Positions 6,809 to 62,916 of a stretch of DNA of 64,000 nucleotides are shown here, piece after piece. The stretch covers positions 1 to 64,000 of the IMG/VR virus record IMGVR_UViG_3300028840_008185; one strand, 5' to 3'. Position 1 is the first letter of the stretch. Each line of letters begins with the position of its first letter. The notes beneath the pieces were generated by a model that did not search any database, was not told the DNA's origin, and saw nothing but the letters and a program-made list of their open reading frames with translations. Position numbers and translations under genes: made by a program.

Positions 6809-7391
6809 CTTCCTTCTCCTTTTCTAAATAAACTCGCAGGCTCTAAGTATTATGATTCCAAACATTCCAACAAGAACTAGCATCCAAATTGCAACAAAGG
6901 TCCAACCAATTGCCCTTGAAAAACGCGGAAACTTTTCATAGATGTGCTGGCAGCCGCGAATAATGCCAAACACAACAAGAGCGAGAGCTATTATAAAGCC
7001 CATCATCATTAGGAACTCTCTGGATTCTTCCGGACTAATCATTCTTCAGCCTTTCTAATACTCTATCAATGACCTTCTGTGCTCTTTTACTTGGCCTCTT
7101 TGTCAAGAAACCTCTTCTCCTGCCCTTGTCGTAAGGAACCGGAGTGGAAAACTGCACTGCGGTTAAGTCCACAACCTTGCCGTTATCTTCTATCCACCAG
7201 TGAGAAGCGCCCTCGTGCTTTAAATTGACCGCATATAATCCGGCGGCTTTGCCGCCTTTCAGGTGATAGTAAGCCTCGCTGGCCACATAACAATGACCTG
7301 CGAGAGGATGAGTTCCACGGAACTGCGGCTTCAGCAGATCTGGCGTTAGAGACTTTACGATAAGCTTCTTGATGTTCATATTTTCCTTTCG

Positions 7392-7471
7392 AGCCGGGTG
7401 GAGGAATCGAACCCCTTGCCTTTCGGCGGCGCCTTACAAGGGCGCTGTCAGCCCAGCCGACATCACCCGGC
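7392..7471 (-). tRNA. tRNA-Thr (TGT), atypical: 8/4 fold with variable-arm hairpin
   Basis: GCCGGGTG/CACCCGGC, GCGCC-CTTGTAA-GGCGC, V arm GCC-GAAA-GGC. Confidence 0.8.
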
Positions 7472-7478
7472 GGTGTTA

Positions 7479-7947
7479 TTGAGAAGATCGATAGGCGGGA
7501 TTCTGTCTAGGGCCATCATTCATCTAGGCCAGCCATTACTGACTAGCTCAAGCCCCCTACCCAATCCTTAATCTGCGAGCAACAGACGGATCTGTTTGGA
7601 GTTGCACCACCTAGAGATTGGCCGTTTCAACCAGACTTAACTGGCTCGTCTCTGTTCCTCTAATCCGGCCCTCACGGGCGATGGGCGTTGCCCACTAAGC
7701 TGCTCTGTGGTGTCCCGACCTTCCTCGTCAAGATTGCTCGTCTCCATAAATTAGTTTGCGTAGAATCTCATATGCCACCTTAGCACACTTTTCTTGGTAA
7801 AGTTCTTTTGCTTTGCAATAAACCTTACCCTCATTTTCAAAGGTTCCCAGAAGCCTATGAAGTTCAACATACGCCCTAATAAGCTCATCCTTCTCTTCGT
7901 AAGTCATGGAGACTCGCTTTCTTGCCGCGATGGCCTAATCTTCTCAA
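7479..7947 (-). ncRNA. rnpB: RNase P RNA, minimal bacterial type, with an ORF-containing P3 insertion
   Basis: CR-I GAGGAAGGTCGGGAC, CR-II ACAGAGA, CR-III TGAAAC, CR-IV AGATGAAT, CR-V ACAGAATCCCGCCTA; P1 TTGAGAAGAT/ATCTTCTCAA; P2 GGCCATC/GATGGCC. Confidence 0.93.
7728..7907 (-). CDS. 59-aa ORF nested in RNase P RNA helix P3 (MTYEEKDELIRAYVELHRLLGTFENEGKVYCKAKELYQEKCAKVAYEILRKLIYGDEQS)
   Basis: uninterrupted ATG..TGA frame filling the P3 insertion; composition like neighbouring phage ORFs; just under the ORF-track cutoff. Confidence 0.7.
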   Translation of the reverse strand: MTYEEKDELIRAYVELHRLLGTFENEGKVYCKAKELYQEKCAKVAYEILRKLIYGDEQS

Positions 7948-19894: not shown

Positions 19895-21934
19895 TTATAT
19901 GTTATTTAACTCCCTTCAAAGAAAGTTTCTTTTCGTCATAATCGGCAACACCAAAATTGTCATGAGATCGTACATACTCCCAAGCTTCACATTTAATCTT
20001 TTTGCCCATCCTACGGACTTTCCTAACGGCAGCTTTGAGCGAACCCAGATGGTTGAAATAGTAGCTCAAATCTCTTGCGCCGAAACCAAACCCAGAACCA
20101 TCAGAACGACCAAGAATATTCTCTATTTCTTCTTGTGTTTTCCAAATATCTCCGCAACAGAAACTTACAACCAAATAATACTTATAGTTCATCTTTCTTC
20201 CTTTCTATCCGTAATTATTCACTCTCCGCTATTTCTATGATTTCCTCAACTTCAACCGCGAAATCCCCCAGGCCATTTTCCCTGAAGAACTTAGCGATAC
20301 TCTCAGCAGAGGCCCTGGAATATCTGTTTCTCAGGGTTTCCAGCTCCGACAACCCAGTATCTATTGCCTCTCTCACCGACCCAAGCAGATGCCTTACATG
20401 ATTAATATATGCTTCCTTGGAGTCTAAGTCAATAACTTCTTGCTCGCTTGGGGAATATTCGAACACACAGTTTGGGTAGTAATCATCAGCGTTGTCTGTG
20501 CCGAACTTCATCCACTCGTGATTATTATGAACACTTACAACAGTCCAGCCAACAAAGTAGTCGTGGGTGTTATAAGAGCCCAGCTGCTTAACATTTATAA
20601 TAGCGAGAGGAGTTGGAGAGAACTTCAAAGTGGTCAGCCTATCATCAATCACCTTTGCTAAACCACCAAAATGAGATCTGTAGCCGTCATCTTCATCTGT
20701 AAGCACTTCAAAAACAAGCGTCTTGCCGTTGTAGCCGAGCTTGAAGTATTGGGCATCAGCTCCATACAACTCATAGCTCAGGTTCAACAACCTATCGTCG
20801 GTTTCCTCGTTGTTGATGTGCTTCATCAGCAATTCCAAAACATCTGGCTCATCAAGCTGGACATTATTCCTTCTAACTCTTGGTCTTCTCATCCCGAATT
20901 TAGCCATTTCCTTCTCCTGTGTTATATGCTTCATAAAAAAGCGCATACCTCAAATTCATGTAAAGCATATGCTCATAAGTTTCGCCGTTTCGTGTGGCCA
21001 TCCTTCTTACAATATCTATGTGCTGATAGGTAGGCATTGCTAAATCCAAATCTTCTTTTATTCTTGGAAAGCGGCGCAATTTTATCATTCATACTCTCCA
21101 TGTATAGTGTCGTAAGCACACATGCGAAAGTCAGGATTAGCAAGGGGCATATAAAGGATGTGCGATGCGCTTGCAAAAATACCCCACAACCCCTTATTCG
21201 CATAATAAATACCCATTTTAGTATCGCCCACCTTTCTGATCTTTATCATCGATCCTCGATGGGGTGCATAGGAACGAGCCTTCCATCTTCATCGTAATCC
21301 TCAAGAAAAGTGTTCATGCTTATTAGCTTGGGGCGCTCATCAGTATTTAGCTCAATGACATACACTTTGTAATTCCAACTCAACCATCGTTTATAGGACT
21401 CAGGTGGTCGTTGCCACGGGGCCCCTGGCCTCATCTGTGCTTCATAGTCAGACCTATAAGCTTCGTATCGCTCCCTAAAACAATCAATTACATCTTGATG
21501 AGATGCAAAGGCACGAGCCGTCTTAATCTTCAGCGGAGATCTCATGCCGTCTTCGCCTAACAGATAAATTCTCATGGAAACTCCTATCTCCATACATACT
21601 TATTCTGCTTCAAATATCTTTTAAACAAACCAACCCTGGTGATTGTGGAAATAATTACCAGGGCAAAAAGTATTCTAAAATGTGGGAGTTTTACGAACTT
21701 TTTAACCCCATGTTCTCCAAATAAATAAACAATAATCAGCTTTGTCCATTTGCATTTTCTAACACTTATTTCCATATCAACTCATTCAAAAGGCTCTGGG
21801 TCCGCCACCTAAGCCTATTCGCCACTGTGATCTCTTTGAATAGCACAAGCTCAATACGCTCCAAAATGCTATGATGAACAACATTACGTAAAGTTTTTAT
21901 TATGTTTCTATCTCTCTTCATTCTTCCTCCAAAG

Positions 21935-22006
21935 CACCCCCACCAGGACTCCAACCCGGATTAATTGGTCCGTAGCCAATCGTGCTATGCATTACACTAT
22001 GGGGGC
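21935..22006 (-). tRNA. tRNA-Arg (ACG)
   Basis: ATTGG-CTACGGA-CCAAT. Confidence 0.85.
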
Positions 22007-26288: not shown

Positions 26289-27587
26289 TTACGATGCTTT
26301 CATGTTGTGTAGTGGCTTCAAAACATTCAATATTTCCGCCGTTTCTGATAAGTTGCTGATGATTTCGTCGCTGTCTTTGTATGCGCCTGGCGCCTCATCC
26401 AATGTGCTTTCACCTACGGAGGTGGAAAATATGCTACTCATCTCATCTTGAAAATCATCCAGCGACAACTTCTTCTTTGCTTGGCTTCTACTCATCTTAC
26501 GGCCTGCTCCATGTGGAGCCGAATAGTTCCAATCCTCATTTCCCTTGCCCACACAAAGCAAAGAGCCTTCTTTCATATTCAACGGAACAATAAACTCTTC
26601 ATCCTCGTGGGCACTAACAGCTCCCTTCCTTATTATCATGTCGTTAAAGTTAATATAGTTGTGTATAGTCTCTAATGTTTTAGACGCTTTCTTAATCCCA
26701 AGGGCTTTCATAACAGCATGGGCAATTGCTTTCCTATTGGCCGCAGCATATCCTTGAGCTAAAATCATACTAAACAAATATCCATACTTATCATCGCCCT
26801 CAAGCCATTCCAAGCCACTTGCTTTTATCTTAACATCAACGCCCAACCTTTCCTTGGCTTTCCTAATCTCTTTCTGCCATTCTTCATTAGGAAGACTTTG
26901 TTTGATGTTATTAATAGCTTCTTTTAAGTCTTCTGTCCTAAGCTTCTTTAATCTTTTCTCTGCTCTCTTTTGCCAGTAATTACATATCTTTAGTCCAAAG
27001 TTTCTTGACCCCGTATGAATAATGAAATAGCTAAGTCCAGATTTTGATTCACAAAACTCAATGAAGTGGTTGCCGCCGCCCAGGGTTCCTAGGCTGCGCT
27101 CTACATATCCTCTGTCGGCATTGACTTGCTTGCACACCTCGCCAAGAAATCTACTATCCATGGTTGGGACATCGCAATTAAACTTGGCCCCAACCTGTCG
27201 AGCCTTATGTCTTAGGTCTTCCCAGTCAATCCAATCGTCAGTTTTGTATTCTTTTGATTCATGTATATCGAAACCAAAAGGCACGGATTGTCTAACCTTG
27301 TGGTCAAGCAACTCGTGATCTATCTCATCAAAAGCATCACCGACTTCACACACAAGCATTCCACAACCAATATCTACGCCAACCACATTTGGAATTACTT
27401 TGTCTCCCAGAGGCATTGTGAAGCCAATAACAGAGCCCTTACCTGCATGAGTGTCTGGCATAATAGCTACTGGATTTGTGAACGCTGGATGGTTGATCAT
27501 GCGTGTGATTTGTGCTACGCATTGTTCTTCAGCGTTGTCTGTGAAAACCGTAGCATCACTATATTTGCCGTAAATTATGAAGCTCAT
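26289..27587 (-). CDS. rtcB: RtcB family RNA ligase
   Basis: MPDTH.G.G..IG, VGVDIGCG, GTLGGGNHFIE, HTGSR, HNY, RKGA, SAPHGAGR, DEAP.AYK. Confidence 0.96.
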   Translation of the reverse strand: MSFIIYGKYSDATVFTDNAEEQCVAQITRMINHPAFTNPVAIMPDTHAGKGSVIGFTMPLGDKVIPNVVGVDIGCGMLVCEVGDAFDEIDHELLDHKVRQSVPFGFDIHESKEYKTDDWIDWEDLRHKARQVGAKFNCDVPTMDSRFLGEVCKQVNADRGYVERSLGTLGGGNHFIEFCESKSGLSYFIIHTGSRNFGLKICNYWQKRAEKRLKKLRTEDLKEAINNIKQSLPNEEWQKEIRKAKERLGVDVKIKASGLEWLEGDDKYGYLFSMILAQGYAAANRKAIAHAVMKALGIKKASKTLETIHNYINFNDMIIRKGAVSAHEDEEFIVPLNMKEGSLLCVGKGNEDWNYSAPHGAGRKMSRSQAKKKLSLDDFQDEMSSIFSTSVGESTLDEAPGAYKDSDEIISNLSETAEILNVLKPLHNMKAS

Positions 27588-29086: not shown

Positions 29087-30817
29087 TTAATAGTTTTCCC
29101 TGATATATTCCAGGGTTGGAAGCACTCTCTCACCCTTTACTTCCTCAACACCCTCAAACATGAGAATCTGCTGGAAAATCTTCTCAGAGAATCCAGCTAC
29201 AACATTGGAACGAGGGTCGCCAGATGGCGCCTGCTGCGTTCCATAGCCCTTAAGGTCGAAGAAGTGAGCGTAGGCCTGAGGGTTGACCTCCCTGCGATAC
29301 TTCGCAAGGAATTCAGCGACACTTCTGTTTCCGCCCGTGTCGTAGCACTGCATATCGGACAGGACCACGATTCTGTCTACGTGGATCTTCTGTTCGAACA
29401 GGTGCTTGAAGACTTCATAGGCGTTTGTTGCCTGACCTCTATAGTTGGCCTTGTAGTTCGCAATCTCGTTCATGTTGGTCACAACCGAGTTGCGCTTGCT
29501 TAGAACTGGCCAAACAGCCTTGTTTCCAAAAGCGGTGACGTAAGATTCGTCAGAACGCTGATGGACCATGGCGGCAAGGATGTTTGCAGTATCCAGCAAC
29601 GTCACACAAGAGCCCTTGGACAATGGGTATTTCATGCTTCCAGAGTTGTCAGAAGCAATGCAAGTTATTCCCGAAAGCTCTGGGATGTTCTCTACCGAAT
29701 GATCAAGAGCAGTCTCAACCGCCTCAACAAGCAGCTGAACAGATCTCTGATCCCAGGAACTTCTGTTACGGTTGGAAGAAGCACTTCCATATCCGCGAAT
29801 CGAAGAGAACCAAGCATTACCAGGGTTCAGGGTTCTGTATAGAGCCATGAACCTAAATGGAAGCTGCTTAGACTTTCTAACAGCCTTAGCGTCTCCGATT
29901 CTCTCCGCAACCATCCTGATGACAGCCAGAGGCATGCCGGCTTCCAAGAAGTTGGCAACGTTACGAATCAGAGCCATATAAGGCATCAGTGGAACAACTG
30001 CTCCCCATACCTCTGGCTTGCTTCCAAACTGGGACACAAGAACTTCCCAAGTAACTGCGGCTTTCTTGGCCAAAGCTGGAATATCCTCAGTCCATAGATT
30101 ACGGGACGTAAGCTCCTTACGAGCCGCGATTACAGGAGTGGCCTTTGGGTTAAGAACCTCTCCAGTAAAGATATAATGGCGTAGCTCTGGAGACAGAGGG
30201 TACCCTTTTCTCCTCTCGCAGAAGCGTAGGAGATCCTTAAAGGATGGGTGTCCCTTTCTGTTATACTTCAAGATTTCATACTCGGACATCTTGGACATTC
30301 TATCAGCAACTCCCTTCTTCAAGGAAGCTGGGAACGCTTTCCAACCGAATAGGTGCTCATAAGCCGCGACAAGCTGAAGCACGTCATCTGCCCTTCTGGA
30401 GATACGAGGCACGTATCTACGGACGAATGGCTTGGTTCCAGCGGAATTTGCAGCCACGGCAAGCATAACCTGAGGCGTAGTTCTCATGTTCATCTCAACA
30501 CGAGCCCAATGCGCCAGAGCAAGCAGATCCTTTGGATTTGGTCCTCTGGCGATCTCTCTACACGCCTCGATAATCTTGACGGCTTGCTCGTCAAGATCCT
30601 CAACGTTATAGTCACCGTCCCTTAGTTTCTTTGGGTCAAGAGTATCTGGGTGATACTTTGGCTCCACGAACAGGGCGGATCCAATTGTAGCCAGCAAGTA
30701 TTCTGCTGGGCTCTCGAAATCAAACGCAAGTCCGCCTGGCCTGTTGGCCGTAGCAGCCTTGTGCTCCCTTAGTGCGTCTTCAAAAGTTCTCTTGTTCTTC
30801 ATTCCTAGCTTCGTCAT
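29087..30817 (-). CDS. rsr: Ro60/Rsr TROVE-domain RNA-binding protein with C-terminal vWA
   Basis: N..GG.AF, AR...NMRT, RADD, LKKG, TWE..S, MPYMALIRN, SKQLPFRF, vWA MIDAS DNSGSM, LSDMQ, GFSEKIF. Confidence 0.95.
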   Translation of the reverse strand: MTKLGMKNKRTFEDALREHKAATANRPGGLAFDFESPAEYLLATIGSALFVEPKYHPDTLDPKKLRDGDYNVEDLDEQAVKIIEACREIARGPNPKDLLALAHWARVEMNMRTTPQVMLAVAANSAGTKPFVRRYVPRISRRADDVLQLVAAYEHLFGWKAFPASLKKGVADRMSKMSEYEILKYNRKGHPSFKDLLRFCERRKGYPLSPELRHYIFTGEVLNPKATPVIAARKELTSRNLWTEDIPALAKKAAVTWEVLVSQFGSKPEVWGAVVPLMPYMALIRNVANFLEAGMPLAVIRMVAERIGDAKAVRKSKQLPFRFMALYRTLNPGNAWFSSIRGYGSASSNRNRSSWDQRSVQLLVEAVETALDHSVENIPELSGITCIASDNSGSMKYPLSKGSCVTLLDTANILAAMVHQRSDESYVTAFGNKAVWPVLSKRNSVVTNMNEIANYKANYRGQATNAYEVFKHLFEQKIHVDRIVVLSDMQCYDTGGNRSVAEFLAKYRREVNPQAYAHFFDLKGYGTQQAPSGDPRSNVVAGFSEKIFQQILMFEGVEEVKGERVLPTLEYIRENY

Positions 30818-33611: not shown

Positions 33612-33685
33612 CGGAACCGACGAGAGTCGCACTCGCTTTCTCCGCCGTGACAGGGCGGTACCTCCACTACTTCGGCCTCGGCTCC
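33612..33685 (-). tRNA. tRNA-Asp (GTC) copy 1
   Basis: CCGCC-CTGTCAC-GGCGG; G73. Confidence 0.85.
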
Positions 33686-34611: not shown

Positions 34612-34724
34612 AAGCCAGGAATAAACGCGCTGGGGTTAACTACTGGAATTGAACCAGCTTAGTTTCGTTATCAGCGAAATGCATTACCATAATGCGAAGT
34701 ATCCCAATCGCTGGACCTTGGCTT
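34612..34724 (-). ncRNA. Y-like RNA 2 carrying an unpermuted tRNA-Ile(GAT)-like D/anticodon/T body
   Basis: scaffold + GCAT-TATGGTA-ATGC, TTTCG-CTGATAA-CGAAA, GCTGG-TTCAATT-CCAGT. Confidence 0.8.
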
Positions 34725-38103: not shown

Positions 38104-38670
38104 TAATGGGTAGTTACCTACCCAGGTTCTGTAAAGTTTATATATTCTGGCTCATAAAGAATAGTGCCGTCTGTTTTCTGCAAACCGGAAAGAACAAATT
38201 TGCGCTGCTTTCCATCAACACAGTCAACCATATAGTAGGTATGCCAGCCGAGCCTCTCCTTCACAACAGTGCCCGCATATGATTTCTTGTGGCCAGACTC
38301 GTCTTTCATCCACCATCTGATATAGTGTCCTACTTTTGGGGCTGCCATTTTCCTTACTTACCTTTTCTTTGTTTAGATAATTCTTCAGCAATTTCATCTG
38401 CTTTAGCAACCAGTTCATCTGGCGATGTGCTTAGATCGCCATACCCACTTGTGCTATACCCTATAAGCTGCATCAGTTGAGTATAATCACCCTCACCAAA
38501 CATGCCTTGGGCATTCATTACGGCAAGATCATTGAGATTTAATTTACCAGTATCTAAAAGCATACGAACAATCTTATTCTCTTTGAACCTAATAACTTTG
38601 CCTGTTTCGTCCCAGCCGATTGGCTGCATTGGGTGTTCAAGATCTTTCGTGTTCATTCTTTCTCCTTTCG

Positions 38671-38758
38671 CTCCAGGGGAGGGCCTCGAACCCCCAATCG
38701 TGCCTTGCGGCTTCATACGTTAACAGCGTACCGGCTTCCCTACTTTGCCTACCCTGGA
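38671..38758 (-). tRNA. tRNA-Asn (GTT) with long variable arm
   Basis: TCCAGGG/CCCTGGA-G; loop CTGTTAA; V region GAAGCC-GCAA-GGCACGATT. Confidence 0.85.
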
Positions 38759-41751: not shown

Positions 41752-42100
41752 ATTTGTTGTATTTCTTTTTAAGTCTTTCAAGCTCAGCCAACTCTTCCGC
41801 TTCCTTAGCGGCCTTCTGTCTTTCTACTTCTTTTATTCTTATAGCACTCCACCATTCATCCACGGGCAAAGATGTTGGGGCAGCAGCTATGGTCATGGCT
41901 TCCAAGTCACACAGGTTTCTATCATATTCACAGCCATAGGAATAGTTTTCAATAAAATATGCTCTCGCTTTAACTTGTGCTTCTGCAAAATCCCTGGCTT
42001 CTATAATCTTAAAGTTAATCCCACAACCAATAGTATAATCACAACCTTCGCCACGCTGTTTGAGTATAATTACATATCTCATCTTTCTTCCTTTCTGTTG

Positions 42101-42184
42101 AACCCCCTGGAGGAATCGAACCTCTTCGCCTCCACCCAACGTGCAAGGCGCGGGTTTAGAAGACCCGTGTCGGGATCAGGGGGC
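42101..42184 (-). tRNA. D-armless 8/4 tRNA-like RNA, anticodon TCT (Arg)
   Basis: GCCCCCTG/CAGGGGGT, CGGGT-CTTCTAA-ACCCG, ~26-nt V region, GAGG-TTCGATT-CCTC. Confidence 0.75.
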
Positions 42185-42188
42185 TTAG

Positions 42189-42272
42189 AACTCCCTGGAG
42201 GAATTGAACCTCTATACCTTACACCAAGCGTTTAGAGGATGGGTTCGTAGCCCATGGCCGGGGTCAGGGAGC
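42189..42272 (-). tRNA. D-armless 8/4 tRNA-like RNA, anticodon ACG (Arg)
   Basis: GCTCCCTG/CAGGGAGT, ATGGG-CTACGAA-CCCAT, ~26-nt V region, GAGG-TTCAATT-CCTC. Confidence 0.75.
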
Positions 42273-42273
42273 T

Positions 42274-42960
42274 TTAATTTTCTTCATAATCTTCCAATGC
42301 CTCTTTGGCAGCCGACTTTACTCCTCCACTTGAATCAGATTCAGCCACCTTTTCGAGGTGCTTTCTAACAGAATTGCTTTCAATCACAGACTCAAGTCCG
42401 TATATCGCTCCTTCTCTGGCAAGAGCGTGAGGATGCCTGAGAAGCGGCAGGAGCGTCTTTTCCTTCTCAATCGGATGCAACTCCGACTTTCCTAGTACCT
42501 CGGCAACAAAAGTGAGATGGCCTGGTCCAAGCGTTTCGCTCTTAATCCATCTCGACAACTTTTCCGGATCCTCTTCCGCCATCTCCTCAAAATTATCTTC
42601 GCTGGGCTTGGGCCAACTTTCTCTTCTCAGTGGGCAGTGGCCCGGCGGACAAAACAAACTGTCATTTTCAATATGAATCTCAGTTCCAGTCCACTCGCAG
42701 TGTTCCTCTGGCTTCTCATAAGAGCACTCATAGCAACACTCGGGAATCTTTACACTTATTTTGTCGCCCTGGTATGGTCTAACTCCTGAAACATCTTTCT
42801 CTTTGTAGGACATACTTTCACTGTCCCACCACTTAATCCATATCATCCAGCCTTCAGTATCTTCTTTATCGATCTCATATATCGTGCCAATCCTACCTGT
42901 AGCTCCTACAACACTAAGACCAACCTTAAGTTTATCCTCTGGAAGCTCCGAAAGTTTCAT
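42274..42960 (-). CDS. multidomain protein with Cys finger and C-terminal HEAT-like repeats
   Basis: LLPLL.HP.AL.REGAIYGL...D.S.GVK.AA.EAL. Confidence 0.55.
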   Translation of the reverse strand: MKLSELPEDKLKVGLSVVGATGRIGTIYEIDKEDTEGWMIWIKWWDSESMSYKEKDVSGVRPYQGDKISVKIPECCYECSYEKPEEHCEWTGTEIHIENDSLFCPPGHCPLRRESWPKPSEDNFEEMAEEDPEKLSRWIKSETLGPGHLTFVAEVLGKSELHPIEKEKTLLPLLRHPHALAREGAIYGLESVIESNSVRKHLEKVAESDSSGGVKSAAKEALEDYEEN

Positions 42961-50579: not shown

Positions 50580-51884
50580 TCATACCTGCTCCCATACATC
50601 CATGATGTCTATAATTTGTTCTCTCGCTGGGCCAACGCCTATGAAAGCGATTGGTATTCCAAGCTCGAAACCTATAAAATCAATATACTTTTTTGCCTCT
50701 TCTGGCAAATCTTCGAACTTGCGGGCTCCAGAAATATCACACTTCCAGCCAGGAAGCGTTTTGTAAATTGGCTTCATTCCCGACAAATCAGTGGGTAGAA
50801 CATGTCTGTTTCTCTGTTTTCCATATCCAACACAGACTCTAATCTCATCGAAATCATCGAGCACATCCAGCTTGGTGATGGCCAGATGTGTGGTCCCATT
50901 AATTCTACAACTATGGAATAACGGCACCAAGTCCAGCCAACCACAATCTCTTGGCCTACCAGTTGTGGTTCCATACTCATGACCTCTACCTCTGATCATC
51001 TCTCCGCTGGCGTCAGTCAAAACGGTTGGAAAGGGCCCTGCACCAACGCGAGTGGTGTATGCTTTGAAGACACCAACAACATCTCTAATCTTCGTAGGGC
51101 CAACTCCAGAGCCCGTACAGGCTGCTCCAGCGACAGGGTTAGAAGAGGTCACGAAGGGATAGGTGCCGTGGTCTATGTCAAGCAGAGCACCTTGCGCTCC
51201 TTCAAATAGCACATTGCGATCATACAAATAATTGTTGATTAGAACAGAAGTATCATTGTCTATGTAGCTCTCAAAGAACTTGGTGAAGCTCTTAATCCAA
51301 GGGGCAAGCTCCTCTGCTCTTCTCATAAGGAAATTGTTCTCAAGGAGGTGAAGCTCAACTTTCTTCTTAAGCTCTTCGTAGGGAAGCAGCATGTCCATCA
51401 TCCTGATTCCACATCTCAGTGCCTTATCTTTATATGCTTGGCTTATCCCCTTGCCGGTTGTGCCTATCTTGTTTCCTTTCCTTCTGTTTTCAGACAACTG
51501 CTCCAACTCTCTGTGAGTGGGCAGGATCATATGTGCCTGGCCAGATATACGGAAGTTCTTAGGCAGCGGGAGGCCGCCTGGAATGGGCCTTCCTCGATTG
51601 TTTATATTCATGAAACTCAAAAGCTCTGCTCTCAAGCCCTCCGGATCAATCACCATCCCATTCCCCAGGACACAAATAAAGTCTCTGTTTCCAAGTGCAT
51701 ACTGAACAATTCCAGACGGAATGTGATGCAACTTGTAAGTCTTTTCACCCACTACGACCGTGTGGCCTGCGTTCGGGCCACCGGCAAAACGAACGACCAT
51801 ATTAGCATCTTTGGCCAAATAATCAATAACTTTTCCCTTGCCTTCATCTCCAAATTGTAATCCTACTACTACGGTTCCAGGCAC
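50580..51884 (-). CDS. purA: adenylosuccinate synthetase
   Basis: GLQFGDEGKGK, GGPNAGHT, IGTTGKGI, EGAQG, GTYPFVTSS, EYGTTTGRPR. Confidence 0.96.
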   Translation of the reverse strand: MPGTVVVGLQFGDEGKGKVIDYLAKDANMVVRFAGGPNAGHTVVVGEKTYKLHHIPSGIVQYALGNRDFICVLGNGMVIDPEGLRAELLSFMNINNRGRPIPGGLPLPKNFRISGQAHMILPTHRELEQLSENRRKGNKIGTTGKGISQAYKDKALRCGIRMMDMLLPYEELKKKVELHLLENNFLMRRAEELAPWIKSFTKFFESYIDNDTSVLINNYLYDRNVLFEGAQGALLDIDHGTYPFVTSSNPVAGAACTGSGVGPTKIRDVVGVFKAYTTRVGAGPFPTVLTDASGEMIRGRGHEYGTTTGRPRDCGWLDLVPLFHSCRINGTTHLAITKLDVLDDFDEIRVCVGYGKQRNRHVLPTDLSGMKPIYKTLPGWKCDISGARKFEDLPEEAKKYIDFIGFELGIPIAFIGVGPAREQIIDIMDVWEQV

Positions 51885-61413: not shown

Positions 61414-62916
61414 TTACATATTCGCCTGAAACTCCACAATATATCTAAGCCTATGTTGCTGGCCTGGGCCAGAAGAGGCATAGGTCATATTTTCGGAGTT
61501 GTAAAGGCCACCATATCCTCGGTTGCTAGGAACAGCATAAACACTATGCGTGCCCCTCGGAGGCTCTCTAAAGAACTGAGAGCTGGTGACGATATGTGGC
61601 TTGCCTACAATCACATCTTCCAAAAACATAAAGACTCTATCGTTCTGGGTCTTTCCAGACCAGAAAGCTCCTCTACACCCACAATAATTCATGGACTTAG
61701 AACTACTCTCGGCGTGATAGAGCGCATCACCAAACATCGACCCAGTATGAACGGCGCCAGATGGCCTGATCAAGAGACCTCTTGAAATGATGCCCACCAT
61801 GTTCTGGGGACGCGTCCCGTGCCAAAGTGGCCACACATTAGCTTGCGTAAAGAGTTTCCGTTCGTCAGTTTGTAGATCAGGGCGTTGTAGTGTGGTGAAT
61901 CTTGGCTTCTCGCCCTTACCCTTAACCTGTCTCGCAACTCTAGTGAGCGTATCGTTGAAATGATCACTTTCCTTATTCCTCTCAAGACTAAAGATATTGT
62001 AGAGCTTTATCTTTCCTAAGAACTGGTGGTTGGATGCGCGAGTCTCAAACAACAGCTTCGTAATCCACTGCCCAGTCGGGCTCTTGGGATCTATCCAGTC
62101 TAATTCCGCATTCAATTTCTTATACTGGTCATCAATAGCACTTCCCTTACCTAGCACAGATGCAACATTTTTGGCGTCCAAGAAGGTGTCCAAAGTGTCA
62201 TGTTTCTCCATGATCTTGTCTATGGTATCCAACCTTAGGGATGCCGGGTCAATCTTGTGTGGAAGCACATGAGGAATAAGGCTATAGAACTGACTGGTTA
62301 GTTGGTCATATTCGCTGGAACCAGACTTAGTTTTGGCATTAACTCTGGATTTACAATCATCCAGAACCGCTCGTCCCTTATCAATCTGCTCTTTCGTCAA
62401 TTGTCCAAGGGGACACTTCAGCGTCATTGTGATAAACTGGCCGGTTGTCCCAAACCAACCAGACACCATGCGGACCACTTCTGGGTGCAAAGATGAGCTG
62501 CCATCAGCTTGCTTGATCTTTCCCTTAACTTTAAGCCCCGTCATGGGCTTCTTGATTTCCTTGGCTCCCTGTGAGCCAACATCCGTAATAGCCAGATCCA
62601 CTTCTCTATAGGGATTTCTCTTTCTGTCCCTTTTCTTTCTAACTAGCGACTCATAGTCGCTTATACAGGCTGATTCGGATTGATAGTATCTGTGTTCCGT
62701 CGTGGGATTTTTGGCTCCAACTCTTCCATACATCGTCATGATTCTGGCCTTACCGTTTGCAGCAACCTGAATCTCAGCATGATAGAACTTGTTATTGTTC
62801 TTTGCAACGTCGGTGCAATTCCCTTCCCACCTTTTCGTGACCTTGAAAGTAGATGGAAAGTTGGGCTGCTTGGCATCGCCAGCCTTCCAAGCCTTCACCT
62901 TCATAGATGCGCCCAT
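61414..62916 (-). CDS. PARP-like ADP-ribosyltransferase (WGR-like + regulatory + catalytic domains)
   Basis: NNNKFY...YGRVG; PLGQL...LTSQFYSLIPH; LWHGT, GSMFG.ALY.A..SSKS.NY, E, RLRYIVEF. Confidence 0.9.
   Translation of the reverse strand: MGASMKVKAWKAGDAKQPNFPSTFKVTKRWEGNCTDVAKNNNKFYHAEIQVAANGKARIMTMYGRVGAKNPTTEHRYYQSESACISDYESLVRKKRDRKRNPYREVDLAITDVGSQGAKEIKKPMTGLKVKGKIKQADGSSSLHPEVVRMVSGWFGTTGQFITMTLKCPLGQLTKEQIDKGRAVLDDCKSRVNAKTKSGSSEYDQLTSQFYSLIPHVLPHKIDPASLRLDTIDKIMEKHDTLDTFLDAKNVASVLGKGSAIDDQYKKLNAELDWIDPKSPTGQWITKLLFETRASNHQFLGKIKLYNIFSLERNKESDHFNDTLTRVARQVKGKGEKPRFTTLQRPDLQTDERKLFTQANVWPLWHGTRPQNMVGIISRGLLIRPSGAVHTGSMFGDALYHAESSSKSMNYCGCRGAFWSGKTQNDRVFMFLEDVIVGKPHIVTSSQFFREPPRGTHSVYAVPSNRGYGGLYNSENMTYASSGPGQQHRLRYIVEFQANM

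What the first reader, a model, noticed from the sequence alone, without database searches (positions are those of the whole stretch)
42101..42272. Tandem D-armless, 8/4-fold tRNA-like RNAs with giant variable arms (UCU, ACG)
Seen: both have an 8-bp acceptor, a 4-bp T stem (GAGG/CCUC), a 9-nt pyrimidine-rich strand replacing the D arm, a perfect anticodon arm and a ~26-nt variable region. The shared architecture despite divergent sequence argues against decay. In the UCU copy the D-replacement CCCGAC can pair with GUUGGG in the V-arm loop; a weaker CCGG/UUGG match exists in the ACG copy. This suggests a pseudoknot that substitutes for the D stem. Established: 8/4 allo-tRNAs with long V arms can be charged with Ser; ArgRS normally reads A20 in the D loop, which is missing here. 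Inference: mistranslating tRNAs, nuclease-resistant tRNAs or decoys.
Basis: partly seen in the sequence, partly recalled or inferred. Interest (0 to 1): 0.75.

Follow-up and report, generated by a model that had tools for sequence, protein, structure and literature searches.

The report
Phage tRNAs with a pseudoknot replacing the D arm
The two tandem RNAs belong to a widespread, so far unannotated class of phage and mobile-array tRNAs (mostly tRNA-Arg UCU) in which the D arm is replaced by a covariation-proven pseudoknot, which contradicts the view that all bacterial-world tRNAs are cloverleaves.

Summary
Two 84-nt genes lie on the minus strand of a 318-kb jumbo-phage record, 4 nt apart: ACG at 42272-42189 and UCU at 42184-42101. 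Standard tRNA finders miss both. Each has an 8-bp acceptor, a 4-bp T stem, a canonical anticodon arm and no D arm.

About 120 distinct relatives exist in viral contigs, in more than 340 GenBank phage records (Vibrio, Acinetobacter, E. coli Av-05 and others, all listed ones unannotated) and in bacterial tRNA arrays.

Across 111 sequences, the strand that replaces the D arm pairs with a segment of the long variable region (helix P: 97.7% paired, all five pairs compensatory). A second helix (V) crosses helix P, forming a pseudoknot.

Members lie inside tRNA clusters on the same strand (558 of 563 neighbouring tRNAs). They fill the UCU slot that canonical genes leave empty, and most encode CCA.

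The best reading is a functional, cognately charged tRNA with a rewired core. Why the core is rewired is unknown; evasion of tRNA-targeting factors is a possibility. Charging has not been shown and expression only weakly.

The parts
42189..42272 (-). Copy 1: 84-nt D-arm-less 8/4 tRNA gene with anticodon ACG (Arg). No CCA is encoded.
   Evidence: Element map. R1 covariance model gives 72.1 bits, E = 1.3e-16. It lacks the family's GGA element and its helix P has one C.U mismatch.
42101..42184 (-). Copy 2: 84-nt D-arm-less 8/4 tRNA gene with anticodon UCU (Arg, AGA). No CCA is encoded.
   Evidence: Element map. R1 gives 86.8 bits, E = 1.1e-20. The minimum-energy fold gives the acceptor, anticodon, V and T stems with z = -2.6.
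42177..42184 (-). Copy 2 acceptor 5' strand. It pairs with 42102-42109 (8 bp); the discriminator U is at 42101.
   Evidence: Across the family the 8-bp acceptor is 99.2% paired and all 8 pairs covary.
42169..42174 (-). Copy 2 helix P 5' strand (CCCGAC), which takes the place of the D arm.
   Evidence: It pairs with 42135-42140. Across the family helix P is 97.7% paired and 5 of 5 pairs are compensatory.
42151..42167 (-). Copy 2 anticodon arm: 5-bp stem and CUUCUAA loop, with the anticodon at 42158-42160.
   Evidence: Across the family the anticodon stem is 98.4% paired and all pairs covary. The loop is CUUCUAA in 99 of 101 UCU members.
42147..42150 (-). Copy 2 V-stem 5' strand (CGCC). It pairs with 42127-42130, and the stem can extend to 6 bp.
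   Evidence: The V-stem core covaries (GC/AU/CG and GC/AU/UA/CG/UG). The swapped-strand null was reached in 0 of 2000 permutations.
42135..42140 (-). Copy 2 helix P 3' strand (GUUGGG). It lies inside the V hairpin loop, which makes the fold a pseudoknot.
42131..42134 (-). Copy 2 UGGA element between helix P and the V-stem 3' strand; proposed equivalent of G18, G19 and A20.
   Evidence: The GG is at least 90% conserved in 111 sequences. The following A is at least 90% conserved in the 45-sequence subgroup. The proposed role is an inference.
42110..42124 (-). Copy 2 T arm: 4-bp stem GAGG/CCUC with loop UUCGAUU.
   Evidence: Across the family the T stem is 98% paired, and the second pair varies among AU, GU and GC.
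42257..42262 (-). Copy 1 helix P 5' strand (CCCGGC). It pairs with 42224-42229 (GCUUGG), 5 of 6 pairs.
42239..42255 (-). Copy 1 anticodon arm: stem AUGGG/CCCAU and loop CUACGAA, with the anticodon at 42246-42248.
42198..42212 (-). Copy 1 T arm: stem GAGG/CCUC with loop UUCAAUU.

Best explanation
These are genuine elongator tRNA genes of a previously undescribed structural class.

Structure (shown by covariation):
- The acceptor/T minihelix is 8 + 4 bp, which gives the normal total of 12.
- The anticodon arm and T loop are canonical.
- The D arm is absent.
- Two nucleotides after the acceptor stem, a C-rich strand (P5') runs straight into the anticodon stem. It pairs with a segment (P3') located 3' of the anticodon arm.
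- The nucleotides just after the anticodon stem (V5') pair with those just before the T stem (V3').
- P and V therefore interlock as a pseudoknot.

Three-dimensional model (inferred):
- Helix P stacks on the anticodon stem like a D stem with inverted strand connectivity. That would keep the anticodon-to-corner distance at 5 + 1 + 5 layers.
- The conserved GGA after P3' would play the part of G18, G19 and A20: the two G contacting the T loop, and the A offering ArgRS its D-loop determinant.

Function (inferred from context):
- The RNA is transcribed with the surrounding tRNA cluster.
- It is trimmed by RNase P and 3' nucleases, and it receives CCA. Most relatives encode CCA; here it would be added by a nucleotidyltransferase.
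- It is charged with the amino acid of its anticodon (Arg for UCU, ACG and CCU) and decodes AGA, the commonest Arg codon of this phage.

The selective reason for the rewired core is unknown. One plausible idea is escape from factors that recognise the canonical D arm or elbow.
For: Structure:
- MAFFT alignment of 111 distinct members: helix P 97.7% paired with 5/5 compensatory pairs; anticodon stem 98.4%; T stem 98.2%. Slid controls fall to 35-55%.
- 45-sequence subgroup: 8-bp acceptor 99.2% paired with 8/8 pairs covarying; V-stem core covaries.
- Swapped-strand null reached in 0 of 2000 permutations for both P and V.

tRNA identity and function:
- 79 of 101 UCU members encode CCA right after a discriminator base.
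- 558 of 563 tRNA genes within 2 kb are on the same strand, and the median gap to the nearest tRNA is 60 nt.
- A canonical tRNA with the same anticodon co-occurs in only 3 of 87 viral and 0 of 34 bacterial loci.
- Five complete 20-amino-acid arrays have Arg TCG, GCG or CCT but never TCT. Array L046 lacks a canonical Tyr gene and has a GUA member.
- Acinetobacter phage fHyAci03, Vibrio phage GRLPWR and E. coli phage Av-05 each have one member (78-82 bits) and no class-I UCU tRNA anywhere in the genome.
- In the few non-Arg members examined, the discriminator fits the cognate rule: A for GUA (2 members) and UAU (1), G for CCA (1).
- In the window phage, AGA is 39% of Arg codons, none of the 40 tRNA genes encodes CCA, and a CCA-type nucleotidyltransferase is present.
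- Contigs from soil metatranscriptome libraries cover a bacterial member at a depth like the neighbouring tRNA-Met.
Against: - There is no direct evidence of a mature RNA, of CCA addition or of aminoacylation. The RNA-library evidence is contig-level, and DNA carry-over cannot be excluded.
- No RNA run was listed for the window itself.
- This phage also has canonical Arg(ACG) at 21934-22006 and Arg(UCU) at 149083-149159, so both copies are redundant here.
- The discriminator is U in 45 of 101 UCU members, whereas bacterial tRNA-Arg normally has A or G at position 73 (PMC9976931).
- The GGA is also present in most Tyr and Trp members, so it is not Arg-specific.
- Copy 1 lacks GGA, and its minimum-energy fold is an alternative structure.
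- In Pyrinomonadaceae the RNA was found in only about 10 of 81 genomes, so no cell lineage is shown to depend on it.
Confidence: 0.7

Rival explanations
1. The RNA is a tRNA mimic with a non-translational role, for example a decoy or inhibitor for a tRNA-targeting host defence nuclease or toxin, or a regulatory RNA. It keeps a tRNA-like outline but is not used on the ribosome.
For: In the window phage both anticodons are already covered by canonical genes. The same gene block carries RtcB, Ro60/TROVE and an RNase P RNA, which suggests a conflict over tRNA integrity. In bacteria the RNA is accessory. Mukai et al. found that some irregular allo-tRNAs were inactive in translation and associated with toxin-antitoxin loci (PMC5389517).
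Against: A decoy has no need for a perfectly canonical anticodon loop together with a 12-bp acceptor/T helix, an encoded CCA and discriminators that match cognate rules. It would also not be expected to be the only UCU-bearing gene in complete tRNA arrays and in three cultured phages.
Confidence: 0.15
2. The RNA is an allo-tRNA-like missense tRNA. SerRS would charge it through the long variable region, and it would insert Ser at Arg codons.
For: It has 8/4 geometry and a long variable region, as in allo-tRNAs that insert Ser in E. coli (PMC5389517). The window phage has no tRNA-Ser among its 40 tRNAs, and it has another 8/4 tRNA (Thr UGU) with a V hairpin. SerRS ignores the anticodon (PMC9976931).
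Against: Allo-tRNA anticodons cover 35 codons, whereas here 101 of 109 are UCU and the rest are few. G73, a serine determinant, occurs in only 29% of UCU members. The V stem is short (3-5 bp) and its loop is tied up in helix P, so it would not project like a class-II arm. Members fill the empty Arg-UCU slot in arrays that already have Ser genes, and Av-05 has three tRNA-Ser genes beside its member.
Confidence: 0.08
3. The two copies are decaying tRNA pseudogenes or chance tRNA-like sequence.
For: Standard detectors do not call them. Copy 1 has a mismatch in helix P, lacks GGA and folds differently at minimum energy.
Against: About 120 distinct homologues show compensatory changes in all five helices. 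The two copies score 72 and 87 bits against the family model. Copy 1 alone could still be a weakened member.
Confidence: 0.02

Closest known systems
(8/4) allo-tRNAs and (8/4) tRNA-Ser/His of bacteria and phages (Mukai et al. 2017, PMC5389517)
   Same: 8-bp acceptor plus 4-bp T stem (12 bp in total). Long variable region. Found in phage tRNA clusters and in Acidobacteria. Missed by standard tRNA finders. The same phage carries an 8/4 Thr(UGU) gene that still has a D arm.
   Different: Allo-tRNAs keep a Sec-like D stem-loop (long stem with a tetraloop) and a free V arm, and they carry very diverse anticodons. This family has no D hairpin, its V loop is pseudoknotted to the 5' strand, and its anticodons are almost all UCU.
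tRNA-Sec (Rfam RF01852)
   Same: Extended acceptor stem and long variable region. Copy 2 gets a weak match of 33.5 bits.
   Different: The score is below the gathering threshold of 47. tRNA-Sec has a 13-bp 8/5 acceptor/T branch, a 6-bp D stem and a UCA anticodon; none of these is present here.
D-arm-lacking mitochondrial tRNAs, e.g. metazoan mt-tRNA-Ser(GCU) and Ascaris mt-tRNA-Ser(UCU) (PMC7609411, PMC9427863)
   Same: There is no D hairpin, and a short connector follows the acceptor stem. They are functional in translation despite the loss.
   Different: The mitochondrial forms are miniaturised, degenerate and flexible, and they work with co-adapted enzymes. This family is longer than a normal tRNA (81-89 nt), G+C-rich, and replaces the arm with a new base-paired structure. 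It lives in bacteria and phages.
Class II tRNAs (Ser, Leu, bacterial Tyr)
   Same: A long extra region between the anticodon and T arms that contains a stem. A few family members carry the Tyr anticodon GUA.
   Different: Class II tRNAs have a normal D arm and a 7/5 acceptor/T split, and their variable arm is a free hairpin.
Pseudoknotted viral tRNA-like structures (plant virus 3' TLS) and the tRNA-like module of bacterial Y RNA (YrlA)
   Same: Both mimic tRNA with a non-cloverleaf fold. A Ro60/TROVE gene lies in the same window.
   Different: In a TLS the pseudoknot builds the acceptor stem at the 3' end of an mRNA. YrlA has no anticodon arm and its ends form the Ro60-binding stem. Here the ends form a normal acceptor stem with CCA, and the anticodon arm is canonical.

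Membership tests
Canonical tRNA (Rfam RF00005 / cloverleaf) | Score at or above the family threshold, or detection by tRNA finders | tested here: not met
   There is no RF00005 hit at gathering threshold or at E up to 10. ARAGORN finds nothing credible. The GenBank record for phage fHyAci03, annotated with tRNAscan-SE 2.0 and ARAGORN, has no feature there.
Canonical tRNA (Rfam RF00005 / cloverleaf) | D stem-loop between the acceptor and anticodon arms | tested here: not met
   Only 8-9 nt separate the two arms, and they pair with a distant segment instead.
Canonical tRNA (Rfam RF00005 / cloverleaf) | 12-bp acceptor/T branch, 7-nt anticodon loop with U33 and a purine at 37, T loop UUCRAnY, discriminator followed by CCA | tested here: met
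   The branch is 8 + 4 bp and covaries. The loop is CUUCUAA in 99 of 101 UCU members, the T loop is UUCRAUU in 105 of 109, and CCA is encoded in 79 of 101.
Canonical tRNA (functional definition) | Aminoacylated and used by the ribosome | not testable with these tools
   There is only contextual evidence and weak RNA-library coverage.
allo-tRNA (Mukai 2017) | 8/4 or 9/3 acceptor/T composition | tested here: met
   The 8/4 split is supported by covariation of the 8th acceptor pair (GC 40, AU 3, UA 1). A 9/3 register does not fit, because the first T pair is G-C in 42 of 45 sequences and position 9 is mostly U or C.
allo-tRNA (Mukai 2017) | Sec-like D arm (long stem with a tetraloop) | tested here: not met
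   There is no D hairpin. The paper's text describes a D stem-loop for allo-tRNAs. Its supplementary sequences are not held, so a direct sequence comparison was impossible.
allo-tRNA (Mukai 2017) | Highly diverse anticodons and Ser (or Ala) identity | tested here: not met
   Anticodon diversity is not met: 101 of 109 members are UCU. Ser identity could not be tested, and G73 occurs in only 29% of UCU members.
tRNA-Sec (RF01852) | Score at or above 47 bits, UCA anticodon, 13-bp branch, 6-bp D stem | tested here: not met
   The score is 33.5 bits, the anticodon is UCU, the branch is 12 bp, and there is no D stem.
Mitochondrial-type D-armless tRNA | Loss of the D arm with a short unpaired replacement loop and reduced size | tested here: not met
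   The replacement strand is base-paired (helix P), and the RNA is 81-89 nt without CCA. ARAGORN in mitochondrial mode gives only a spurious call on the opposite strand.
Bacterial Y RNA (YrlA) | The ends form a Ro60-binding stem, and the tRNA-like module lacks an anticodon arm | tested here: not met
   The ends form an acceptor stem followed by a discriminator and CCA, and a canonical anticodon arm is present.

The most novel reading that the evidence does not exclude
The rewired core is an adaptation in the conflict over tRNAs. Replacing the D arm and elbow-side core with a pseudoknot, while keeping the anticodon loop, the 12-bp branch and a GGA mimic of G18, G19 and A20, would leave the tRNA usable by ArgRS, EF-Tu and the ribosome. 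At the same time it would no longer be recognised by a host tRNA-targeting nuclease or toxin, or by the phage's own machinery for degrading host tRNA. That would be immune evasion by changing the tRNA's fold rather than its sequence. It would explain why the RNA travels with phages and mobile tRNA arrays, and why this phage keeps it next to RtcB.
Probability: 0.25. Interest if true: 0.92.

Novelty: new variant of a known kind. Interest (0 to 1): 0.86.

Why it matters
[quoted passage not shown] In the searched literature, D-arm loss is treated as a mitochondrial peculiarity (PMC7609411).

This work finds a natural, G+C-rich, covariation-supported alternative tRNA core that is common in phages of Vibrio, Acinetobacter, E. 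coli, Aeromonas and Salmonella, and in bacterial tRNA arrays. It is missing from the annotation of every listed GenBank record.

If it is charged and used:
- it means many phage genomes are missing their tRNA-Arg(UCU) in annotation, which affects codon-usage and host-range inference;
- it offers a new orthogonal scaffold for tRNA engineering;
- it makes the question of what the D arm is for directly testable in cultivable phage-host pairs.

Tried and rejected
- ARAGORN in standard, relaxed and mitochondrial modes gave nothing or spurious calls.
- Single-sequence folding reproduces the architecture for copy 2 but not for copy 1 (z = -1.35), so it was not used as evidence for copy 1.
- A distant BLAST of the 6-kb neighbourhood against GenBank phages found only ordinary tRNA matches and no close relative of this phage.
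- No RNA run was listed for the window.
- I tested whether the RNA is the sole UCU decoder of an Acidobacteriota genome. The result is inconclusive, because the recovered tRNA set also lacked Phe and Lys(UUU) outside the array and is therefore incomplete.
- I tested whether it is a core, vertically inherited gene of Pyrinomonadaceae. This is rejected: about 10 of 81 sampled genomes have it. The search used strict filters, so this is 'not found in those searched', not 'absent'.
- My first pattern for canonical UCU tRNAs was too strict at T-loop position 59. I repeated it with a relaxed pattern. The three raw matches in Av-05 are not tRNAs by ARAGORN.
- A 9/3 register and a 7/5 register were both rejected on pair counts.
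- I considered reading the UCU hairpin as a D arm and the V hairpin as the anticodon arm. This is rejected because the V loop is 15-20 nt, while the UCU loop is a canonical 7-nt loop.
- The GGA as an Arg-specific A20 mimic is not specific, because most Tyr and Trp members also have GGA.
- The supplementary sequences of Mukai et al. are not held, so overlap with their '(9/3) allo-tRNA UCU/CCU' or 'missing nucleotides 9-11' sequences could not be checked.
- Complex prediction (RNA with ArgRS) was not run, because it gives no verdict for RNA and would not separate ArgRS from SerRS.

Full report
**What is in the window.** The window is the first 64 kb of a 318-kb IMG/VR virus record, estimated 79% complete and flagged as provirus. 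It is a dense minus-strand block holding 35 of the genome's 40 ARAGORN tRNA genes, an RNase P RNA, and many small ORFs. The larger genes in it include RtcB, a Ro60/TROVE protein, a Ham1 NTPase, GroEL, an adenylosuccinate-synthetase homologue and a PARP-like protein.

The finding fills the gap between a 228-aa ORF (stop at 42274) and a 110-aa ORF (start at 42082). It has no promoter-like or terminator-like site of its own.

Read on the minus strand there are two 84-nt units separated by 4 nt: copy 1 at 42272..42189 (loop CUACGAA, anticodon ACG) and copy 2 at 42184..42101 (loop CUUCUAA, anticodon UCU). Each has an 8-bp acceptor beginning with G1.U72, a 9-nt C-rich strand, a perfect 5-bp anticodon stem, 26 nt of 'variable' region, a 4-bp GAGG/CCUC T stem with a UUCRAUU loop, and a U discriminator.

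ARAGORN and the Rfam tRNA model do not call either copy. Copy 2 gets only a sub-threshold tRNA-Sec match. These are the only two such genes in the 318-kb record.

**A large family.** I first scanned IMG/VR contigs for the shared T-arm plus 3'-acceptor motif. That gave 26 loci, 23 of which had the same odd layout, and ARAGORN called none of those 23. To avoid circularity I then scanned with two other anchors: the UCU loop plus only the T loop, and the GGA element plus the T arm with no anticodon constraint.

A covariance model (R1) run over all fetched loci recovered about 120 distinct members at 44-101 bits. A scan of one genome per prokaryotic species found members in Pyrinomonadaceae and other Acidobacteriota, Verrucomicrobiales, Vibrio, Hydrogenophaga, Spirabiliibacterium and a Mycobacterium MAG.

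BLAST against GenBank phages found more than 340 matching records: Vibrio 304, Acinetobacter 32, and also Escherichia phage Av-05, Aeromonas AhSzw-1, Salmonella Arash and the 440-kb Salicola phage SCTP-2. In every listed record the site is unannotated or lies under a 'hypothetical protein'. That includes a record annotated with tRNAscan-SE 2.0 and ARAGORN.

**The structure is shown by covariation.** All counts below come from sequence-only MAFFT alignments.
- In the alignment of 111 distinct members, the C-rich strand after the acceptor pairs with a segment inside the variable region (helix P) in 97.7% of cells.
- All five helix-P pairs show changes on both sides, for example CG 44, GU 25, GC 16, UA 16, AU 9 at one position.
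- That is as good as the anticodon stem, at 98.4%.
- Sliding the partner by 1-3 columns drops pairing to 35-55%, and no shuffle reaches the observed scores (first seen on 23 sequences).
- In a 45-sequence subgroup where linker lengths agree, the 8-bp acceptor is 99.2% paired with all eight pairs covarying. This establishes the 8/4 split against 7/5 or 9/3.
- In the same subgroup, a second helix (V) joins the nucleotides right after the anticodon stem to those 2-3 nt before the T stem. It covaries at two positions around an invariant C-G.
- An independent test compared each sequence's own strands with strands swapped between sequences. For both P and V, 0 of 2000 permutations reached the observed score. 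There were 59 distinct strand pairs for P and 51 for V.

The strand order is P5', anticodon arm, V5', A-rich linker, P3', (A/U)GGA, V3'.

In copy 2, P is CCCGAC/GUUGGG and V is CGCC/GGCG, extendable to 6 bp. In copy 1, P is CCCGGC/GCUUGG with one C.U mismatch and V is CCU/AGG, and the GGA is missing.

**How it probably folds (inference).** The 8 + 4 branch keeps the 12 bp that EF-Tu reads (PMC5389517). P5' is continuous with the 5' strand of the anticodon stem through one nucleotide, usually A. So P can stack on the anticodon stem as the D stem does, giving 5 + 1 + 5 layers against 5 + 1 + 4 in a normal tRNA.

Compared with a cloverleaf, the strand that leads into the anticodon stem now comes directly from the acceptor. 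Its partner, followed by a D-loop-like GGA, has moved to the 3' side of the anticodon arm.

The GG is at least 90% conserved in all 111 sequences, and the T loop is canonical. A G18/G19-type elbow contact is therefore the simplest reading.

**What it does.**
- Members sit in tRNA clusters. 84 of 122 instances have a tRNA within 2 kb, 558 of 563 such neighbours are on the same strand, and the median gap to the nearest one is 60 nt.
- 79 of 101 UCU members encode CCA after the discriminator.
- A canonical tRNA with the same anticodon is almost never present in the same locus: 3 of 87 viral loci and 0 of 34 bacterial loci.
- In five arrays that contain all 20 amino acids, the canonical Arg genes carry TCG, GCG or CCT and never TCT. 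In the 30-gene viral array L046 the canonical Tyr gene is missing and a GUA member is present.
- In an Acidobacteriota genome, the member sits between tRNA-Met and tRNA-Thr inside a 24-gene array.
- Acinetobacter phage fHyAci03, Vibrio phage GRLPWR and E. coli phage Av-05 each have one member and no class-I-spaced UCU tRNA anywhere in the genome. Av-05 has three ordinary tRNA-Ser genes in the same cluster.
- Anticodons in the 109-member core set are overwhelmingly UCU (101), with ACG (3), GUA (2), and one each of CCU, CCA and UAU. In the few non-Arg members the discriminator fits the cognate rule: A for GUA and UAU, G for CCA (identity rules from PMC9976931).

Together these points argue for cognate tRNAs, chiefly tRNA-Arg(UCU), rather than Ser-charged missense tRNAs.

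In the window phage, AGA is the commonest Arg codon at 39%. None of its 40 tRNA genes encodes CCA, so the lack of CCA in the two copies is simply this genome's style. A CCA-type nucleotidyltransferase is encoded at about 105 kb, and no ArgRS was found.

**Limits.**
- Nothing here shows charging.
- The only expression evidence is that short contigs from soil and rhizosphere metatranscriptome libraries cover a bacterial member at a depth similar to the adjacent tRNA-Met, and that some contigs break exactly at its 5' boundary. DNA carry-over cannot be excluded.
- In this phage both copies duplicate canonical Arg genes.
- U73 is common among UCU members, although bacterial tRNA-Arg normally has A or G at position 73.
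- The GGA is not Arg-specific.
- In Pyrinomonadaceae the RNA is accessory, found in about 10 of 81 sampled genomes. It therefore behaves as cargo of mobile tRNA arrays and phages, not as a core cellular gene.
- Copy 1 may be a weakened member.

**Comparison with what is known.** The nearest described relatives are the 8/4 allo-tRNAs and 8/4 phage tRNA-Ser/His of Mukai et al. Those keep a Sec-like D stem-loop and have very diverse anticodons.

In the searched literature, D-arm loss is otherwise known only from mitochondria. A 2024 paper states that all known bacterial tRNAs are cloverleaves (PMC11551756). Rfam 15 has no matching family.

I therefore rate this as a new structural variant of a known kind (tRNA). 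It is widespread and unannotated.

**Why the core is rewired** is open. The neighbouring RtcB, Ro60 and RNase P RNA, and the known arms race over tRNAs, make evasion of D-arm or elbow-dependent tRNA-targeting factors an attractive hypothesis. It is untested.

Noticed in passing
window 7476-7745 (-): A bacterial class-A RNase P RNA (145.8 bits) is encoded in this phage record. It is compact: 270 nt matched against a 367-position model. It lies immediately upstream of a tRNA gene. A phage-borne RNase P RNA is unusual.
   Followed up: no
window 7391-7471 (-): The gene that ARAGORN calls tRNA-Thr(UGU), 81 nt, is itself an 8/4 tRNA with a D arm and a GCC-GAAA-GGC variable hairpin, so it is allo-tRNA-like. 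R1 gives it 33 bits. It is a possible evolutionary link to the D-arm-less family.
   Followed up: partly
window 38670-38758 (-): A tRNA-Asn(GUU) of 89 nt with a long variable arm sits 5 nt from a normal 75-nt tRNA-Asn(GUU). A class-II-like Asn tRNA is abnormal.
   Followed up: no
whole record G000: The 40-tRNA set has no tRNA-Ser and no tRNA-Cys, although it has duplicates of Lys, His, Asn, Pro, Met and Glu. Rfam also calls tRNAs at 33612-33685 and 34639-34700 that ARAGORN misses.
   Followed up: no
window 26289-27587 (-) and 29087-30817 (-): An RtcB RNA ligase and a Ro60/TROVE protein with a vWA domain lie inside the tRNA block. Ro60 normally partners a Y RNA, but Rfam called none, so an unrecognised Y-like RNA may be nearby.
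   Followed up: no
window 50580-51884 (-): An adenylosuccinate-synthetase homologue (Pfam 511 bits) matches best to the PHROG annotated as 2-aminooxy adenylosuccinate synthetase (PurZ-like). This hints at a modified-purine (Z-base) genome, or simply at a PurA.
   Followed up: no
window 61414-62916 (-): A 500-aa protein has WGR, PARP regulatory and PARP catalytic domains, which is a eukaryote-like PARP architecture in a phage.
   Followed up: no
L077:2889-2968(-), L088:5900-5979(+), L118:3308-3386(-), also L028, L032, L067, L119, L135, L174, L121: A second D-arm-less design ('variant B') has a 7/5 acceptor/T split and UA at positions 8-9. A 5-nt strand pairs with a segment shortly after the anticodon arm (ACC/GGU, CCC/GGG, GCC/GGC), followed by a conserved UAAYUGGA, with no V stem. 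The anticodons are again mostly Arg (UCU, ACG).
   Followed up: partly
L242:1603-1691(-), L254:2137-2226(-), L306:843-932(+), L255:2978-3067(-): In Verrucomicrobiales arrays, a second family-like gene with a GUA (Tyr) anticodon and A73-CCA lies about 1 kb from the UCU member. Its T loop is aberrant (UGCGAUU, AGCGUUA, AGCAUUA) and its T stem is GUGG/CCAC.
   Followed up: no
family-wide: Half of the UCU members (50 of 101) begin with a G1.U72 wobble and another 18 with A1-U72. A subgroup has an A.C or A.A mismatch at the 8th acceptor pair. The significance is unknown.
   Followed up: no
window, 3' flanks of several tRNA genes: At least six tRNA genes (Thr 7391, Gly 32720, Asn 38670, Leu 44455, Pro 46788, Met 49406) are followed directly by GAAAGG. 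This may be a shared ribosome-binding site for downstream ORFs or a processing signal.
   Followed up: no
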